From IMG/VR virus record IMGVR_UViG_3300032562_000004, positions 171,813 to 235,812 of that record: 64,000 nt of DNA. The stretch is one strand, 5' to 3'. Positions 951 through 39,914 of this stretch are shown here, piece after piece. Both the position numbers and the translations under genes were made by a program. Below the pieces are notes generated by a model. That model did not search any database. It was not told where the DNA came from and saw only the letters and a program-made list of their open reading frames with translations. Numbering within the stretch: the stretch's first letter is position 1; every line of letters starts with the position of its first letter.

Positions 951-1292
951 CTGTTATTTTCTGTTTCGACGGATAACTCCGCAAAGCAGTGATTAAACTG
1001 CTAATGTTTGGCGTTGTGCTGTACGAGCAGAGAAACGAATTCCCTTACCTGAAACAGTTACTTCGCCTTTAGATGCGTTTGCATTTAAGTTTTTCGCTTG
1101 ATTTACAGTCATCGCCTACTGTGTTGCCTCTTTCATTATCTCACCATGTCGAAACCTTGTCATCCCCACTGAAACATACTACAGCTTTTGGCCTCGCTAC
1201 CGATAACTCGGTTCGGTAATATGCTTCGGTGGAGATGCCGGGAATCGAACCCGGGTCCACAGCGCCTTCACTACGAAGGAATTACAACAATT
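951..1292 (-). ncRNA. ssrA: Circularly permuted (two-piece) tmRNA: acceptor piece ~1292..1228, intervening segment 1227..1168, coding piece 1167..~951
   Basis: T-arm plus 3' acceptor strand GGACCCGGGTTCGATTCCCGG-CATCTCC-ACC precedes the 5' strand GGGGATG-ACAAGGTTTCGAC. The 7-bp acceptor stem has G3.U70. A resume context AAACTTAAAT-GCA-AAC is followed by a tag ORF. Confidence 0.9.
993..1082 (-). other. tmRNA tag reading frame ANASKGEVTVSGKGIRFSARTAQRQTLAV*
   Basis: Resume codon GCA at 1082..1080, 29 sense codons, TAA at 995..993. Confidence 0.8.
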
Positions 1293-1294
1293 CT

Positions 1295-1498
1295 TTACAG
1301 CGGAAGAATATTTGATGCTTGCTTGCCTTTAGGGCCTGCCACTACATCGAATGTTACCGCTTGATTCTCTTTTAAACTCTTAAAACCATTTGTGCTAATT
1401 GCGGAAAAATGTGCAAACAATTCCTCACCACCAGCATCGGGGGTAATAAATCCAAACCCTTTTGCATCATTAAACCACTTTACTTTACCTGTTGCCAT
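1295..1498 (-). CDS. cspA: Cold-shock protein (CSD)
   Basis: [18 protein letters not shown] (RNP1) and LFAHFSAI (RNP2), 67 aa. Confidence 0.97.
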
Positions 1499-1784: not shown

Positions 1785-1860
1785 TGGTGGTCCGGGTAGG
1801 ACTTGCACCCACACTCCCCGAATTATGAGTTCGACGCTTTACTTTTTAAGCTACCGGGCC
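1785..1860 (-). tRNA. tRNA with CAU anticodon, probably Ile2 (lysidine type) rather than Met
   Basis: GGCCCGG...TCGAA-CTCATAA-TTCGG...GTGGG-TGCAAGT-CCTAC-CCGGACC-A-CCA, 76 nt with encoded CCA. C4-G69/C5-G68 pairs favour Ile2. Confidence 0.88.
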
Positions 1861-30558: not shown

Positions 30559-30819
30559 TTATAGTGTTTTGCCCACTTGAGTTAAAATTTGTTCTAGCAA
30601 GCTATGGTCATCTTGTGTACGGCCAAATTCAGCTTTGTGAGCAATCTTAATAGCTTTTTTAAGGATAGCTGGTTTAATTTCTAATTCTTCAGCAATAGCT
30701 TTAACTGTGTCATTCAATCCACCTTGTAGTGTTTCGATTTCCATAGTAACAGCCATACCTTCATTGATAATTTGCTCTAATTTTTTAGTTTGTTCTGCTG
30801 TGAATACGCGGTCTGACAT
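30559..30819 (-). CDS. Small DNA-binding protein (DsbA/GapR-like)
   Basis: 86-aa helical protein, ...VKAIAEELEIKPAILKKAIKIAHK. Confidence 0.55.
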   Translation of the reverse strand: MSDRVFTAEQTKKLEQIINEGMAVTMEIETLQGGLNDTVKAIAEELEIKPAILKKAIKIAHKAEFGRTQDDHSLLEQILTQVGKTL

Positions 30820-30846
30820 TTAGTTCTCCTGTTAATAATGTTACAA

Positions 30847-30875
30847 GTATACAGGATATTTTGGATGAAGTCAAA
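30847..30875 (-). promoter_or_regulatory. sigma70-type promoter
   Basis: TTGACT-TCATCCAAAATATCCTG-TATACT. Confidence 0.75.
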
Positions 30876-30879
30876 TGAT

Positions 30880-30975
30880 AAAAGACACTTTTGGCTAAAC
30901 GGTAGCGAATCGCTTTACCAAGGCAGGCTCCGCCTACACCGGCCGTTTTACAACGGTCCTAAGGGTGTTCTTTAC
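30880..30975 (-). ncRNA. Candidate multi-stem ncRNA driven by a late promoter
   Basis: Closing stem AAAGAACAC/GTGTCTTT with three internal hairpins; GC-rich island in AT-rich DNA; TAAATA at 30988..30983. Confidence 0.55.
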
Positions 30976-31072
30976 ATATAAGTATTTACCGAAGTACAGT
31001 TTTCAAAATGCCAACGATTCATAGCATTAGAGTAGTTGGATATCCCCATATCGCGAACTACACTTTTATTTA
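30972..31072 (-). pseudogene. Homing-endonuclease relic: conserved leader (copy 3) fused to C-terminal MNRWHFENC
   Basis: TAAATAAAAGTGTAGTTCGC-GATAT-GGGG-ATATC-CAACTACTCTAATGCT followed by ATG AAT CGT TGG CAT TTT GAA AAC TGT. Confidence 0.75.
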
Positions 31073-31153
31073 TCTATAGATAACAGGTGCGTAAGGATTA
31101 AGTTTATAATCCTCATCACCGTGTTGTTCTGGATAAACTGGATATTCGTTCAT
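31070..31153 (-). CDS. 27-aa peptide MNEYPVYPEQHGDEDYKLNPYAPVIYR
   Basis: Manual translation; preceded by TAAATA. Confidence 0.5.
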   Translation of the reverse strand: MNEYPVYPEQHGDEDYKLNPYAPVIYR

Positions 31154-31161
31154 ATTAATAT

Positions 31162-32256
31162 TTATTTAAAATCGTTATCGGACAAATAATAGTCTTCAAT
31201 ATTAAATTTATGGATAATATTGAAATCAGTATCGATACCTTCAAACATCATACGCTGTAAGAAAACAGTTCGTAAGCTAGGCTTTTTGAGTTTATTATCG
31301 AGATAGTCTTGATTTTTATCAAATTCAAATATTTCTAATTTTGCTTGTTTTTTATACTCAACCCATTTTGTGATATTCCTAGCATCTTGCGAGTTAATAC
31401 TCCAAAGTTGGAAATCAGTTGAATCATAAAAATGGTGTAAGTATGTATTCATAAATTCTTCAGAAAAGTTATGCCATAGTTTCGGAGAGCATAACACTAA
31501 TAATCTAAATCTTACTGATTGCCACTTAAAGCAAAAGTTCCACCACCAAAACCAATCAGCATTTTTTTCTATTGTTATACCGTATGTGTCAGCTGAACGA
31601 CATACTGCGTCTATTAATAATGTAGAAACTTTAGGAACTTGTATTTTGCTGTTTAAGTACGAAAATATAATATCTTTAGAAAAGCTATTATTAAAAACAT
31701 CAGCTCTTTCTAACATAAAGTTTTTTAACATATCGCTACCAAATAATTGGTCGTTATGCTCACCTGTTACTAATATAATACTTTTATCAAATAACCAAGG
31801 AATAGTTTCACTATTGATTATTTGTAATTTGCCAGCAATATAATTTCTAAAGAATTCCTGATTTTCAATTACTGCGTCATAGCTTGTTAATACTCTAATT
31901 CTATCTTTAACTTCAGCTAACGGATAATTTTCTAAAAAACTAATCAACATTCTTGTACTGTCGATGCCGCCGCTCCACATAATGCCTAATGGCTTTTGTA
32001 GTCGAATGCTAAGTTCCCATAGTTCAGCAGCTCGTTTGTTACAACAATCTCTATAAGATAAAAAATTTGATGTTAATAGCGGTAACTCGCTACCTGGATA
32101 TACTTTAGTGTTGATTGGTTGTTTAAACTGGTTAGTTCTATCTACTAACCCAACAGCATTACTAATAGTTTTGTACATTGCTTTCCAGTCAGCAACTTCT
32201 GAATATAATGGTGTCGGTAATACAGCATTAGAATTAAAATAATAAACGGATTTCAT
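31162..32256 (-). CDS. PP-loop (N-type) ATP pyrophosphatase, QueC/asparagine-synthetase-like
   Basis: IMWSGGIDST, VTGEHNDQLFG; ATGA overlap with the upstream gene. Confidence 0.7.
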   Translation of the reverse strand: MKSVYYFNSNAVLPTPLYSEVADWKAMYKTISNAVGLVDRTNQFKQPINTKVYPGSELPLLTSNFLSYRDCCNKRAAELWELSIRLQKPLGIMWSGGIDSTRMLISFLENYPLAEVKDRIRVLTSYDAVIENQEFFRNYIAGKLQIINSETIPWLFDKSIILVTGEHNDQLFGSDMLKNFMLERADVFNNSFSKDIIFSYLNSKIQVPKVSTLLIDAVCRSADTYGITIEKNADWFWWWNFCFKWQSVRFRLLVLCSPKLWHNFSEEFMNTYLHHFYDSTDFQLWSINSQDARNITKWVEYKKQAKLEIFEFDKNQDYLDNKLKKPSLRTVFLQRMMFEGIDTDFNIIHKFNIEDYYLSDNDFK

Positions 32257-32885
32257 GTTTCGGCATTGCCCCAAAATTCTGTATATATTTGCATTCTTAC
32301 AATATCTAATTCTTCTTGCGTAATTGCTTGGTTAATCATATCTTTGAATTTTTCTGCTAGGGCAGTAATTCTAAATTTAGTTATATTTTCAGTCTCAATT
32401 TTCAAACTTAACTCAGCAAATACTTGTTCAACCGGACGCTCAACAATGCGAGCATACTCTTCTATCATAAGAGTATAAAATCCTTTACTAGGATCGCATT
32501 TTGTTATTTCTATATCGGCGACGGCACTAAACGCTGTCCATTTTGTTGTATCGACTCTTAATAAAGCATTTCCAGTATGGGTTTCCCATATACCAAATAA
32601 AATATGTCTGCGCTTTATAATTTCACGATTAATTAACCAAGATTCACTAACTTGAGTTGGATCAATAGGAACTAACTGTCCTGATCGCTTGTCATTTTTC
32701 CAAACATTATCATAAAATTCTGTTCGGTTTTTAAACTTTTCATAGTTATTTACAAATGGTGTAATACCACGCACAAAGCAATCAATAGAACTTGACGCTA
32801 ATGCGTTAGCTGTAACTAATCGATTGGTAGAAGTGTAAACACAAAAATTTTCGTGACTTACTACAAGGTAGTGCATATCGTACAT
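32253..32885 (-). CDS. Hypothetical protein
   Basis: 210-aa ORF coupled to the PP-loop gene. Confidence 0.65.
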   Translation of the reverse strand: MYDMHYLVVSHENFCVYTSTNRLVTANALASSSIDCFVRGITPFVNNYEKFKNRTEFYDNVWKNDKRSGQLVPIDPTQVSESWLINREIIKRRHILFGIWETHTGNALLRVDTTKWTAFSAVADIEITKCDPSKGFYTLMIEEYARIVERPVEQVFAELSLKIETENITKFRITALAEKFKDMINQAITQEELDIVRMQIYTEFWGNAET

Positions 32886-38108: not shown

Positions 38109-39914
38109 TTATTTAGGTGCGGCAACTAATCGAACATTCTGTGCGATATCGCCTCTGTAGCCGTGTGTTGATTCAGGGTCATCTGCCCCGGTATTGATAG
38201 GTTTGTTAGTTTTCATATTAAATGCGTAAACATTTAATGAACGCCCATAACGTTGTTCTAAATCTTGCCATACTCTTTGGCCGCCTGGGGATTGATATTT
38301 GTCACTAACTAGCGTAAGCCCTTGGTTTTTAACCAACCAAGCATACAAATCTGCGGCACGAATAGGAGCTTTAGGACCTCCATATATACCAAATATTTCA
38401 AATGAATGTGGTTTGTTTGTTCCGCTAATGGTCATTTGACTAACGCGAGTTTTAGGATCAAAAACGGAGTAAGCAGAATCGTTACCCTTGTCCCACTTAT
38501 ATACTTCTAACTGTCCTAAGTTCCCTACTAAGTTACCAAGTAAACGTTTTTCTTTACCTGGAGGCACTGGTTCGCCTTTGTTTACTAAACCTGACTTGTC
38601 TTGATTTTTAGTTTTGATATTGTTATGATAAATCACTTCACTTAACTCTCGTTCTTTATTTACGCGAGCCATATGCTGATCATATGTTTCTTCATCATCG
38701 TCTGACTCTAAGGGAACATAAGCTGGCATAGAAGTCATACCCATATCTCTAGCAGCCACAGCTCTGTGGTTGCCGTCAATAATCCAGCCTTCATTATCTA
38801 CTACAATAGGTTTATTTTTAATGTCTTGTGCTGTAATATCTTTAACATAATTGTAGTCAACTAAGTTGATTTGATCGTACGGACTAACTTCATCTGAATC
38901 TATATGTAAACTAGTTAGAGGTACCGTAGTGAGTTCCCATTTAGCATGATTCATTACAGCATGGTCTATAGTAAATTCATCTTTAGGATGTATTTTTTTA
39001 ACATAAGACAATATTTCTTTGTTACTTTCTTCGCTGACTGGTTCCCATGACATTGGTTTAGCACCTTTAGCGACGGGTTTAAAACCATGACGCTTATATA
39101 ACTTAGTTAATGAGGCTTGACTTACATTACCCTTAGCCCAAGGATACAATGTTAACTTAATACCCGCTTCTTGTGCTTGACGCTGTAGCTCTTTAATAGC
39201 ACGACTACCAACACCTTTGCGTTGTTCGGGCCCGGCCATGATCCAATCTATTTCTACTGTATCAGGTTTCATACTAGGTTTGAGTTTGAACGCGGCAAAT
39301 TGCTGATCTTCGCCTTCTCCCCATACCATAACTTTATCTGCTTGACCATACGGCCAATCAGGATACTGACTATATACCCTGTCAATAAATTCTTGTGCTT
39401 TATTTGATTCTACAGCTTCATTTAAATTTTTTTTTAAAAAAGTATCGGCTAACTTTTTACACAGTAATTTAATCTTGCTATTTTCTGTAATAATGATTGT
39501 AAACTTTTCTTGGGTATTATCTTGTGATGGATCACTATACCCGCAATAAGCTAATTTGATATGTTTTTCATTTAATAAATCTGTACAGCTAACGCCATAG
39601 CGATTATCGCCAGTATCTTCACAGCATGGGCTCAGTGTAGTAATTACAATACTGCCCTTTGGCAATTCTCCGTACTCTTCTTCATACTTGTCTATGGCTG
39701 CTCGTTCCGCATGGATTCTTGAATTTCCATATAGATAATTTACACCAGTGACTAATCTACCCCGAGTATCTAATACCGCGGCGGCTACCATACCATAAAA
39801 GTCTGGATTATCTTGTTGTCCTTCGATGACCATATCGCAAAGCTCAACAAGAACTGCGTCTAGTTTTTCACGACTAAACTTTAGTTTAGGTTGGATAAAA
39901 TCGTTTAAAATCAT
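38109..39914 (-). CDS. Multi-domain protein: Zn-deaminase + GNAT + ParB-like + GNAT-like
   Basis: HAERAAI...TLSPCC..C; QRKGVGSRAI; PIVVDNEGWIIDGNHR; SDKYQSPGGQRVW. Domains joined at LNE, VSEE and LSE. Confidence 0.8.
   Translation of the reverse strand: MILNDFIQPKLKFSREKLDAVLVELCDMVIEGQQDNPDFYGMVAAAVLDTRGRLVTGVNYLYGNSRIHAERAAIDKYEEEYGELPKGSIVITTLSPCCEDTGDNRYGVSCTDLLNEKHIKLAYCGYSDPSQDNTQEKFTIIITENSKIKLLCKKLADTFLKKNLNEAVESNKAQEFIDRVYSQYPDWPYGQADKVMVWGEGEDQQFAAFKLKPSMKPDTVEIDWIMAGPEQRKGVGSRAIKELQRQAQEAGIKLTLYPWAKGNVSQASLTKLYKRHGFKPVAKGAKPMSWEPVSEESNKEILSYVKKIHPKDEFTIDHAVMNHAKWELTTVPLTSLHIDSDEVSPYDQINLVDYNYVKDITAQDIKNKPIVVDNEGWIIDGNHRAVAARDMGMTSMPAYVPLESDDDEETYDQHMARVNKERELSEVIYHNNIKTKNQDKSGLVNKGEPVPPGKEKRLLGNLVGNLGQLEVYKWDKGNDSAYSVFDPKTRVSQMTISGTNKPHSFEIFGIYGGPKAPIRAADLYAWLVKNQGLTLVSDKYQSPGGQRVWQDLEQRYGRSLNVYAFNMKTNKPINTGADDPESTHGYRGDIAQNVRLVAAPK

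What the first reader, a model, noticed from the sequence alone, without database searches (positions are those of the whole stretch)
30880..30990. Orphan ~95-nt multi-branched RNA with its own late promoter
Seen (minus): TAAATA, then AAAGAACAC...GTGTCTTT closing three hairpins: GGACCG/CGG-CC, AGGC(GG)/(CCT)GCCT and GGTA-GCG/CGC-TACC. It is a GC-rich island with no ORF and is followed by a separate sigma70 promoter for the next gene, so it is unlikely to be that gene's leader. It has four-way-junction topology but lacks tRNA D- and T-loop consensus. Inference: an undescribed phage small RNA, perhaps a tRNA mimic, decoy or antitoxin.
Basis: partly seen in the sequence, partly recalled or inferred. 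Interest (0 to 1): 0.65.

Follow-up and report, generated by a model that had tools for sequence, protein, structure and literature searches.

The report
Phage RNA antisense to 23S rRNA
This is a real small folded RNA, absent from Rfam, that occurs once per genome in a large group of uncultured jumbo phages, and its two near-invariant exposed segments are exact antisense copies of one of the most conserved stretches of bacterial 23S ribosomal RNA, so it probably binds the host's large ribosomal subunit.

Summary
The ~95-nt GC-rich island (window 30879-30973, minus strand) is a genuine structured RNA. A covariance model finds it in 120 related viral loci. It occurs once in the window's own partial record and once at high score in each of five 300-353 kb relatives. 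Rfam and ARAGORN give nothing.

Covariation supports P1/P2, a P3 hairpin whose loop forms a pseudoknot with the 3' tail, and a P4 hairpin with a 9-nt loop: 86% of cells paired against 64% in shuffles, 0 of 500 shuffles as high.

The two invariant motifs are antisense to adjoining 23S rRNA segments. CCUUAGGACCG is the complement of C1920-G1930 (3' strand of helix 69 into helix 70). The P4 loop AUUCGCUACC is the complement of G1929-A1937. All 170 distinct members keep this, with 10-15 contiguous nucleotides in the first motif (13 in the window copy). An unrelated small phage carries a stand-alone, terminator-flanked version.

Best reading (about 0.5): an antisense RNA, probably late-expressed, that pairs with free or assembling 50S subunits. 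The effect on the ribosome is unknown and expression is untested. It is not a tRNA mimic.

The parts
30879..30973 (-). The structured RNA (covariance-model match, whole model)
   Evidence: cmsearch with R1: 62 bits, E 5.8e-20. It is the only match in the 158.5-kb record.
30983..30988 (-). TAAATA, a possible T4-late-type promoter for the RNA (unproven)
   Evidence: The motif is strand-biased, 42 against 19. The same motif lies 6-7 nt before P1 in stand-alone copies L114, L157, L347, L135 and L188. Here it lies 14 nt before P1.
30964..30968 (-). P1 5' strand (ACACC), pairs with 30936-30940 (GGUGU)
   Evidence: Helix 1: 4-5 of 5 pairs have changes on both sides.
30952..30964 (-). Seed 1: CCUUAGGACCGUU, perfect antisense of 23S rRNA A1918-G1930 (the 11-nt core is invariant in the family)
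   Evidence: 170 of 170 members complementary over 1920-1930. Numbering fixed.
30941..30959 (-). P2 hairpin GGACCG-UUGUAAAA-CGGCC, an antisense image of rRNA helix 69
   Evidence: P2 covaries (helix 2). It is absent in the 'short' members, where seed 1 is a hairpin loop.
30921..30935 (-). P3 hairpin AGGC-GGAGCCU-GCCU; the 7-nt loop is the 5' strand of the pseudoknot
   Evidence: 99.7% paired, and all 4 pairs have changes on both sides.
30893..30919 (-). P4 hairpin (GGUAAAGCG / CGUUUAGCC) with loop AUUCGCUAC
   Evidence: Helices 5-7. The mutual-information scan ranks its pairs highest.
30901..30910 (-). Seed 2: AUUCGCUACC, of which UUCGCUACC is the antisense of 23S rRNA G1929-A1937 (helix-70 loop)
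   Evidence: A 9-nt complement in 121 members and a 10-nt complement in 11 of 170. Coverage profile.
30884..30889 (-). 3' strand of the pseudoknot (AGUGUC), preceded by the conserved AAA linker
   Evidence: Helix 4. Fully compensated variants occur in L087, L086, L342, L005 and L079. The pseudoknot is weak in this copy.
30846..30874 (-). Sigma-70-type promoter-like site (TTGACT-17-TATACT) of the next gene; not part of the RNA
   Evidence: Conserved in relatives with and without the RNA.
30559..30819 (-). 86-aa DsbA-like DNA-binding protein gene, the syntenic downstream neighbour
   Evidence: phrog_12534 and phrog_639. One cultured relative is annotated DsbA. 168 of 211 pattern-selected RNA loci have this gene 74 nt to 5.5 kb downstream on the same strand.
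31003..31028 (-). Hairpin followed by UUUU: a weak terminator-like end of the upstream unit
   Evidence: Fold. It was not listed by the consensus scan because it has few G-C pairs.

Best explanation
The element is a folded ~85-95-nt phage RNA whose job is to base-pair with bacterial 23S rRNA at nucleotides ~1918-1937 (E. coli numbering). That stretch is the 3' strand of helix 69 and the stem and loop of helix 70, on the subunit-interface face of the 50S subunit.

Shown:
- The RNA family, its secondary structure and its strand.
- Its single-copy occurrence.
- The exact, family-wide complementarity of its two invariant unpaired segments to adjoining rRNA segments.

Inferred mechanism:
- The P4 loop (AUUCGCUAC, containing a YUNR-type UUCG) kisses the helix-70 loop.
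- The first seed (CCUUAGGACCG, 11-15 nt, presented as a hairpin loop or bulge) pairs with C1920-G1930 and invades the helix-69 stem.
- P1/P2, P3 with its pseudoknot, and the P4 stem act only as a scaffold that holds the two seeds out.

Binding should be possible only on free 50S subunits, late assembly intermediates or nascent rRNA, because in 70S ribosomes this surface is buried (bridge B2a; established knowledge).

The likely consequence is that bound subunits cannot join 30S or finish maturing. That would shut down or re-direct translation, or expose the rRNA to degradation. This last step is speculation.

The RNA is made either from its own TAAATA-type promoter (a minority of loci, possibly this one) or as the 3' end of the upstream gene's transcript.
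For: (1) Real RNA.
- 120 covariance-model matches, 110 of them distinct.
- 86.4% of cells paired against 64.0% in shuffles; 24 of 28 pairs with double changes; covariation 0.474 against 0.138; 0 of 500 shuffles as high; slid controls 0.03-0.08.
- Replicated on the second alignment.
- Pseudoknot variants are fully compensated: GCCCCCA/UGGGGG, GCCUACA/UGUAGG and AUCCCC/GGGGAU.

(2) Strand.
- G-U pairs outnumber A-C pairs 161 to 62 in the helices.
- The RNA has the same orientation as the flanking genes.
- U-tract terminators follow the stand-alone copies.

(3) Complementarity.
- The rRNA sequence was read from a bacterial genome and from E. coli, and the numbering was derived from the annotated rrl gene.
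- All 170 distinct members are complementary over 1920-1933, and 80-95% as far as 1937, with sharp edges.
- Contiguous matches in seed 1 run mostly 11-15 nt, and 41 members have 15 nt.
- The expected number of 15-mer matches to a 2.5-kb rRNA is about 2e-4 (my calculation).
- The 11-mer occurs in the sampled bacterial genomes only once or at the rrl copies.

(4) The invariant nucleotides of the family are exactly the complementary ones. They stay invariant while their structural context changes between hairpin loop, bulge and partly paired. Flanking bases tend to extend the complementarity.

(5) Energetics.
- Co-folding with rRNA 1896-1962 gains -20.7 kcal/mol, against -5.2 +/- 2.4 for 200 shuffles (best shuffle -13.2).
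- The family mean is -19.0.
- This tile is the best of all 67-nt LSU tiles, -20.5 against -12.0 for the next.

(6) A variant lacking P3 and the pseudoknot keeps both seeds (UUCGCUACCU is a 10-nt complement). It sits between terminators, upstream of terS/terL/portal, in a small phage that shares no detectable protein with the held 158.5 kb of this genome. That points to a host target rather than a phage protein partner.

(7) One copy per genome: 1 in the window's own partial record and one strong match in each of five large relatives, one of which also has a second weak match.

(8) The flanking genes are highly variable, 58 clusters upstream and 37 downstream, so the RNA is not tied to one regulated gene.
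Against: - No expression data: no RNA run was listed.
- No experiment shows binding.
- In mature subunits C1920-C1924 is paired within helix 69, so invasion has a cost that was not modelled in the context of the whole ribosome.
- The two seeds overlap on G1929-G1930 (by 5 nt in the 15-nt subgroup). Their order in the RNA is co-linear with the target rather than the order of a simple antisense, so both cannot pair fully at once without an unusual geometry.
- A 9-nt match by itself occurs by chance in a conserved family; a sense 9-mer match elsewhere in the LSU appears in 58 members.
- Why a phage that still needs ribosomes would disable 50S subunits is unexplained.
- The same rRNA stretch also occurs in SENSE orientation, co-oriented with tRNA arrays, in other phages. 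It is also the classical homing-endonuclease site of LSU rDNA (from memory). Some other logic may therefore link phages to this sequence.
- Most copies abut a stop codon, which could mean a cis role.
Confidence: 0.5

Rival explanations
1. Cis-acting mRNA element. Sitting directly after a stop codon, and often 8-30 nt before an SD-less start codon, it tethers the released ribosomal subunit through rRNA complementarity. This would promote re-initiation on the next gene or otherwise affect termination and recycling, in the way the calicivirus TURBS motif pairs with 18S rRNA.
For: - In most loci the RNA begins 0-10 nt after the stop codon of a same-strand ORF, whatever that ORF encodes.
- Even here a minimal AUG-UAA precedes it.
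- Where a gene follows directly it lacks a Shine-Dalgarno sequence.
- In at least four unrelated phage groups a contiguous antisense piece of the same rRNA stretch lies 3-14 nt after a same-strand stop codon.
Against: - Stand-alone copies lie between terminators with no ORF upstream.
- In about 40% of loci a strong promoter and Shine-Dalgarno sequence separate the RNA from the next gene.
- In several phages the antisense piece is followed at once by a terminator with no downstream gene.
- Initiation begins on the 30S subunit, not the 50S (established knowledge).
- Compact phage genomes place any intergenic element next to a stop codon.
Confidence: 0.13
2. The RNA binds a protein or has another structural role, for example as a processing or stability element at the end of a late transcript. 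In that case the rRNA complementarity is a relic of origin from a captured antisense rDNA fragment, or a coincidence.
For: - The window's P2 looks like an antisense copy of helix 69, which is compatible with descent from rDNA.
- Strong synteny with the DsbA-like gene, 168 of 211 loci, could hide a protein partner.
- U-rich tracts often follow the pseudoknot strand.
Against: - A relic would decay. Instead the complementary bases are the only invariant ones across 170 members and two unrelated phage types, and the flanks extend the pairing.
- No protein is shared between the two phage types in the sequence held.
- The structural context of seed 1 varies, which is unusual for a protein site.
Confidence: 0.15
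3. The true partner is not ribosomal RNA but another nucleic acid carrying the same sequence. Candidates are sense-orientation helix 69-70 look-alike RNAs such as those in phage tRNA arrays, or the rrl DNA itself (R-loop or guide function at the classical LSU homing site).
For: - Isolated 19-46-nt copies of exactly this rRNA stretch are over-represented in viral contigs: 25 stretches against 3 and 4 for two other universal 23S 17-mers.
- They occur in both orientations.
- The stretch coincides with the I-CeuI / I-PpoI-type homing sites (from memory).
Against: - The window's genome holds no sense copy.
- No endonuclease, recombinase or Cas-like gene is consistently nearby.
- rRNA is by far the most abundant matching molecule in a cell.
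Confidence: 0.1
4. Riboswitch or self-cleaving ribozyme: the conserved loops and the pseudoknot form a ligand pocket or an active site.
For: - An H-type pseudoknot with an embedded hairpin and about 25 invariant nucleotides is typical of aptamers and ribozymes.
- In four loci the pseudoknot's 3' strand can alternatively pair with the next gene's start region.
- Gene context is variable, as for ribozymes.
Against: - The downstream genes are unrelated and usually have their own promoter.
- The pseudoknot domain is dispensable in the second class.
- Stand-alone copies start at P1, leaving no upstream cleavage substrate.
- There is no Rfam match.
- The invariant bases are fully explained by rRNA complementarity.
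Confidence: 0.07

Closest known systems
Kissing-loop antisense RNAs (CopA/CopT of plasmid R1, RNAI/RNAII of ColE1, Sok/hok)
   Same: Stable hairpins present 6-9-nt loops containing YUNR-type motifs (here CUUA and UUCG) that are exactly complementary to the target. Two recognition loops would allow stepwise binding (inference from established knowledge of those systems).
   Different: Those RNAs are encoded opposite their targets and act on one mRNA. This RNA is encoded by a phage, its target would be host ribosomal RNA, and it has a pseudoknotted scaffold. It is not homologous to them.
Box H/ACA and box C/D guide RNAs of archaea and eukaryotes
   Same: Small structured RNAs that pair through short guide segments with universally conserved LSU rRNA, including the helix-69 region.
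   Different: No C/D or H/ACA boxes and no pseudouridylation pocket. The order of the two arms is co-linear with the target instead of the antisense order with an inserted stem. No partner proteins. The setting is a bacterium and its phage.
preQ1-II-type H-type pseudoknots with an embedded hairpin (riboswitch architecture)
   Same: The topology of P3, the pseudoknot and P4: the hairpin loop pairs with the 3' tail, a hairpin is inserted in the third loop, and an A-rich linker is present.
   Different: No sequence or model similarity. No consistent downstream gene. The pseudoknot domain is absent in the second class.
Calicivirus TURBS and other mRNA-rRNA complementarity elements
   Same: A viral RNA segment complementary to conserved rRNA, placed at a stop/start junction.
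   Different: TURBS pairs with small-subunit rRNA and lies upstream of the stop codon. This RNA pairs with large-subunit rRNA and also exists as a stand-alone gene.
Ribosome-associated non-coding RNAs (for example the yeast TRM10-derived 18-mer and tRNA fragments in Haloferax)
   Same: Small RNAs proposed to bind ribosomal subunits and tune translation (from memory).
   Different: Those lack long Watson-Crick complementarity to rRNA and lack a conserved fold. None is phage-encoded.
tRNA / tRNA-like structures
   Same: Similar size and three hairpins. Seed 1 (CUUAGGA) superficially resembles an anticodon loop.
   Different: No acceptor stem that covaries, no D or T loop, and no match by ARAGORN or the tRNA model.

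Membership tests
tRNA / tmRNA | Cloverleaf with acceptor stem and D and T loops, detectable by ARAGORN or the Rfam tRNA model | tested here: not met
   ARAGORN finds only the tRNA-Met and the tmRNA elsewhere in the window. There is no tRNA-clan match at E up to 10. The closing helix does not covary.
Any Rfam 15 family (4227 models, including riboswitches, ribozymes and phage motifs) | A covariance-model match at or near the gathering score | tested here: not met
   No match over the element at gathering score or at E up to 10. No match at E up to 5 in eight diverse members.
Riboswitch (cis-regulatory aptamer) | Lies in the 5' UTR of a functionally coherent set of genes, with an expression platform | tested here: not met
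   There are 37 downstream gene clusters. The commonest downstream gene has its own promoter between it and the RNA. Stand-alone copies lie between terminators.
Riboswitch (cis-regulatory aptamer) | Binds a small-molecule ligand | not testable with these tools
   Needs in-line probing or ITC.
Small self-cleaving ribozymes | Site-specific self-scission | not testable with these tools
   No known catalytic core was matched. Stand-alone copies begin at P1, which argues against a 5' cleavage site.
Trans-acting antisense RNA | Conserved, exposed seed exactly complementary to a defined target | tested here: met
   Seeds of 10-15 nt and 7-10 nt against 23S 1919-1937 in 170 of 170 members. They are unpaired or loop-exposed in the consensus fold.
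Trans-acting antisense RNA | Made as a discrete transcript with its own promoter and terminator | tested here: inconclusive
   Motif evidence exists only for a minority: 11 of 233 loci have TAAATA upstream, and the class-2 copies have terminators. No RNA-seq run was listed.
Trans-acting antisense RNA | Physical pairing with the target in vivo | not testable with these tools
   Needs pull-down, sedimentation or structure probing.
Box C/D or H/ACA guide RNA | C/D or H/ACA boxes, a k-turn, and guide arms flanking a pocket in antisense order | tested here: not met
   No such boxes appear in the consensus. The arm order is co-linear with the target.
Homing-endonuclease target site (DNA level) | A contiguous 19-26-bp site, independent of orientation, with no RNA-level constraint | tested here: not met
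   In this family the two half-sites are separated by 40-60 nt and permuted. The intervening helices covary with G-U asymmetry. The contiguous pieces in other phages were not resolved.

The most novel reading that the evidence does not exclude
Phages of at least two unrelated kinds encode RNAs that bind the host's 23S rRNA by Watson-Crick pairing at helix 69/70. That is the intersubunit bridge B2a region and the same spot that some toxins and homing endonucleases exploit. The binding would disable, re-programme or dismantle 50S subunits late in infection. This would be a direct RNA-on-rRNA mode of ribosome takeover. It may be part of a wider contest over this rRNA segment, which also includes sense-strand look-alikes in phage tRNA arrays.
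Probability: 0.42. Interest if true: 0.92.

Novelty: categorically new. Interest (0 to 1): 0.8.

Why it matters
If the pairing is functional, this is the first natural bacterial or phage RNA known (to me, and in the literature I could search) to target ribosomal RNA by extended antisense pairing. It would be a new way for viruses to control translation. It would add to the tRNAs, tmRNA, ribosomal proteins and translation factors that large phages already carry; this window itself holds a two-piece tmRNA and a tRNA-Met.

The idea is directly testable. The target is identical in E. coli, so the RNA can be expressed in a laboratory strain and followed by sedimentation, probing and cryo-EM.

It also offers a natural design for RNA ligands of helix 69/70, a region of interest for ribosome biology.

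Even if the mechanism is wrong, the family is a well-supported new RNA class: hundreds of members, a pseudoknot, and strong covariation. It deserves a database entry.

Tried and rejected
- tRNA or tmRNA mimic: rejected.
- Known RNA family: none found.
- MAFFT plus RNAalifold recovered only P3. A hand-drawn structure on a 14-sequence seed, followed by covariance-model realignment, was needed.
- Leader of the DsbA-like or polymerase genes: rejected, because a conserved promoter intervenes and accessory genes are inserted between them in many genomes.
- Antisense regulator of phage mRNAs: one-mismatch complements of seed 1 are mildly enriched in the window (7 against 1.6 expected), but the three sites I translated, all in one gene, fall at ordinary coding sites (APK, GPK, WSK) without context; the other three were not examined. 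Dropped.
- Extra tertiary pairs between the conserved loops or with the 5' flank: the mutual-information scan gave only one extra P4 pair.
- CsrA sponge (single AGGA), sarcin-ricin or L11-region mimicry, and complementarity of the pseudoknot strands to rRNA: rejected, because those positions covary or the motifs are incomplete (reasoning).
- Cellular homologues: 80 pattern hits in prokaryote genomes all failed the model, as chance predicts. 0 of 151 genomes of one betaproteobacterial order matched. The nearest cultured phage with the same DsbA-like/polymerase synteny lacks it.
- Expression: no RNA run was listed for the window.
- Homing endonucleases among the flanking genes: none found.
- Variant P4 loop (GUCGUGC) against rRNA GCACGA: only 6 nt, about 12% of members. 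Kept as a weak observation only.

Full report
**What is there.**
On the minus strand, window 30973-30879 carries a GC-rich stretch (GC 0.49) in an AT-rich region. Reading 5' to 3' on that strand, the features around it are:
- A tiny conserved ORF at 31153-31070.
- Two hairpins, the second followed by UUUU.
- A TAAATA motif.
- The element itself.
- A TTGACT-17-TATACT promoter-like site.
- An 86-aa DsbA-like gene.
- A family-B DNA polymerase.

The window belongs to a 158.5-kb viral record estimated to be 45% complete. Its relatives are 300-353-kb phages known only from metagenomes. No cultured phage matches the DNA.

**Is it more than chance?**
The fold of the single sequence is unremarkable (-30.6 kcal/mol, z = -1.79). 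Homologues are abundant, however.
- The 86-aa neighbour recovered at least 596 viral loci. Many of them carry a related element just upstream.
- A motif scan that ignores that neighbour recovered at least 120 more.
- MAFFT plus RNAalifold recovered only one helix.
- I therefore built a covariance model from 14 sequences with a hand-drawn structure. It matched 120 loci, 110 of them distinct, all at full length. The window scored 62 bits with E = 6e-20.
- There is one match in the window's own record. Each of five large relatives has one strong match, and one of them also has a second weak match.

**Structure.**
On 79 sequences the structure, including a pseudoknot, gives:
- 86.4% paired cells against 64.0% for shuffles.
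- 24 of 28 pairs with changes on both sides.
- A covariation score of 0.474 against 0.138, with 0 of 500 shuffles as high.
- Slid-partner controls of 0.03-0.08.

The second alignment reproduces this result. An independent mutual-information scan ranks the same pairs first and adds one further P4 pair.

The parts are:
- P1, enclosing the invariant CCUUAGGACC.
- An optional P2 hairpin.
- P3, with 4 bp and a 7-nt loop.
- P4, closing a 9-nt loop AUUCGCUAC.
- An AAA linker.
- A 3' strand that pairs with the P3 loop.

The pseudoknot is shown by complete swaps: GCCCCCA/UGGGGG, GCCUACA/UGUAGG, AUCCCC/GGGGAU, GGCUACU/AGUAGCC and GGGUGCU/GUGACC.

G-U pairs outnumber A-C pairs 161 to 62, which identifies the gene-sense strand as the RNA.

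**Context.**
- The RNA always has the orientation of its neighbours.
- It usually starts 0-10 nt after a stop codon.
- It has 58 different upstream and 37 different downstream gene clusters.
- Among 211 loci chosen by RNA motif alone, 168 have the DsbA-like gene 74 nt to 5.5 kb downstream on the same strand, with accessory genes inserted in between.

It is therefore a fixed landmark in a variable region, not the leader of one gene.

**Other checks.**
- Rfam has nothing for it.
- Pattern hits sampled from prokaryote genomes were all chance.
- 151 betaproteobacterial genomes had no match.
- No RNA sequencing run was listed.

**A second, simpler form.**
Four or five loci keep the first domain and a hairpin whose loop holds (U)UCGCUACCU, but they lack P3 and the pseudoknot. 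In L157:
- A terminator precedes it.
- TAAATA lies 6-7 nt before P1.
- The hairpin is followed by a U-tract and then by a second strong terminator.
- The next genes are small terminase, large terminase and portal.

No protein in these loci resembles any ORF in the held 158.5 kb of the window's genome. This form is a stand-alone small-RNA gene in an unrelated phage.

In the main class only a few loci, possibly including this window, have TAAATA upstream: 11 of 233. Elsewhere the RNA is probably the tail of the upstream transcript.

**The key finding.**
I searched the literature for the two invariant words. This returned papers on 23S rRNA m5U1939 that contain both words, which led me to compare the RNA with 23S rRNA.

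I read the rRNA from a Methylophilaceae genome and from E. coli, and took the numbering from the annotated rrl gene. The stretch reads A1918-A-C-G-G-U-C-C-U-A-A-G-G-U-A-G-C-G-A-A1937.
- CCUUAGGACCG is the exact complement of C1920-G1930.
- The P4 loop is the exact complement of G1929-A1937.
- In the window copy the first seed extends to 13 nt (A1918-G1930).
- The window's P2 hairpin is an antisense image of helix 69.

Across 170 distinct members:
- Complementarity covers 1920-1933 in essentially all and reaches 1937 in 80-95%, with sharp edges.
- Nearly all members have 11-15 contiguous nucleotides in the first seed, and 41 have 15.

The invariant bases of the family are the complementary bases. 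They remain so whether they sit in a hairpin loop, in a bulge or in a partly paired segment.

Co-folding with rRNA 1896-1962 gains -20.7 kcal/mol, against -5.2 +/- 2.4 for shuffles. It is the best of all LSU tiles.

By established knowledge (not tested here), the target is the 3' strand of helix 69 and the stem-loop of helix 70. It lies at the subunit interface, next to bridge B2a and to m5U1939. From memory, it is also a region cleaved by some MazF toxins and used as a homing site by several intron endonucleases.

**Interpretation.**
The simplest reading is an antisense RNA against 23S rRNA. It would bind free 50S subunits, late assembly intermediates or nascent rRNA.

What follows from binding is not known. 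It could be a block of subunit joining, arrested maturation, or exposure of the rRNA to decay. I give the pairing itself about even odds of being the function.

The main caveats are:
- There are no expression or binding data.
- The two seeds overlap on the target and are arranged co-linearly with it.
- Part of the target is paired in mature subunits.
- The benefit to the phage is unclear.

**Wider pattern (partly followed).**
A contiguous 17-mer antisense to the same stretch occurs in 25 viral stretches, of which only about three are true rDNA. Two other universal 23S 17-mers occur in only 3 and 4 stretches.

In at least four unrelated groups the antisense piece lies 3-14 nt after a same-strand stop codon. 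In two cases it follows an endolysin or a protease gene and is followed directly by a strong terminator. That is the layout of a 3'-UTR-derived small RNA.

In another set the same piece is in SENSE orientation relative to large phage tRNA arrays and has its own conserved flanks.

This rRNA segment therefore recurs in phages in both polarities. That raises the interest, but it also leaves room for explanations other than simple rRNA binding.

**Verdict.**
'Undescribed phage small RNA' is right. 'tRNA mimic' is wrong. The most likely function is pairing with 23S rRNA helix 69/70, which would be a new kind of phage-ribosome interaction.

Noticed in passing
L418-L442 (viral contigs), e.g. L429:784-860, L431:836-920, L426:2280-2296: Isolated 19-46-nt pieces identical to the antisense of 23S rRNA ~1912-1960 in unrelated phages. 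Several lie 3-14 nt after a same-strand stop codon (endolysin, protease) and are followed at once by a strong intrinsic terminator. There are 25 such stretches, against 3-4 for control rRNA 17-mers.
   Followed up: partly
L419, L423:240-256, L425:436-452, L440, L442, L432, L418: The same rRNA stretch in SENSE orientation, co-oriented with large phage tRNA arrays (up to 27 tRNAs, and one locus with a tmRNA). It has conserved flanks: GGGAUUACA upstream, and UAGCGA repeated on either side of a hairpin downstream. This may be a separate RNA family that mimics helix 69/70.
   Followed up: partly
window 1024-1330 (-) and 1785-1860 (-): A two-piece (permuted) betaproteobacterial-type tmRNA (Rfam 117-118 bits) and a tRNA-Met are encoded in the same window. 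The phage invests in translation, and the tmRNA type hints at a betaproteobacterial host.
   Followed up: no
window 31070-31153 (-); relatives such as L004, L010, L014, L034: A conserved ~27-aa ORF (M..YPVYPEQ..GD.D..YK.NPYAPV) often lies directly upstream of the RNA. Radical-SAM/SPASM genes are among the variable neighbours. It may be a small peptide gene or a precursor peptide.
   Followed up: no
window e.g. 45958, 32753, 305, 31165 (-); many related loci: (A/G)TAAATA lies 4-8 nt before the ATG of many genes that lack a Shine-Dalgarno sequence, and it is strongly strand-biased (ATAAATA 8 against 1). It looks like a T4-late-type promoter giving leaderless or near-leaderless mRNAs, or like an A/U-rich initiation signal.
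   Followed up: partly
window 31162-32274 (-): The 370-aa ORF has an SGGxDS PP-loop motif (GIMWSGGIDST) but no Pfam or PHROG match. Its likely true start is the ATG 4 nt after a GTAAATA motif.
   Followed up: no
window 38109-39914 (-): A 601-aa protein combines dCMP/cytidine deaminase, GNAT acetyltransferase and ParB-like nuclease signatures, an unusual fusion that may be involved in nucleotide or DNA modification.
   Followed up: no
L022:1716-1740 and L023:282-306: A truncated extra copy of the RNA's 5' end (TATAGAATACCCTTAGGAC followed by unrelated sequence) lies about 600 nt upstream of the full copy. It is a trace of rearrangement at this variable locus.
   Followed up: no
L015, L016, L020, L021, L034 (upstream of the DsbA-like gene): Close relatives lack the RNA at the position upstream of the DsbA-like gene. 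In L015 and L020 the junction (..TAACAATAGCC / ..TAACATAGCC) resembles the sequence that flanks the RNA in L005. It was not checked whether their RNA lies further upstream beyond the 2.5-kb flank.
   Followed up: no
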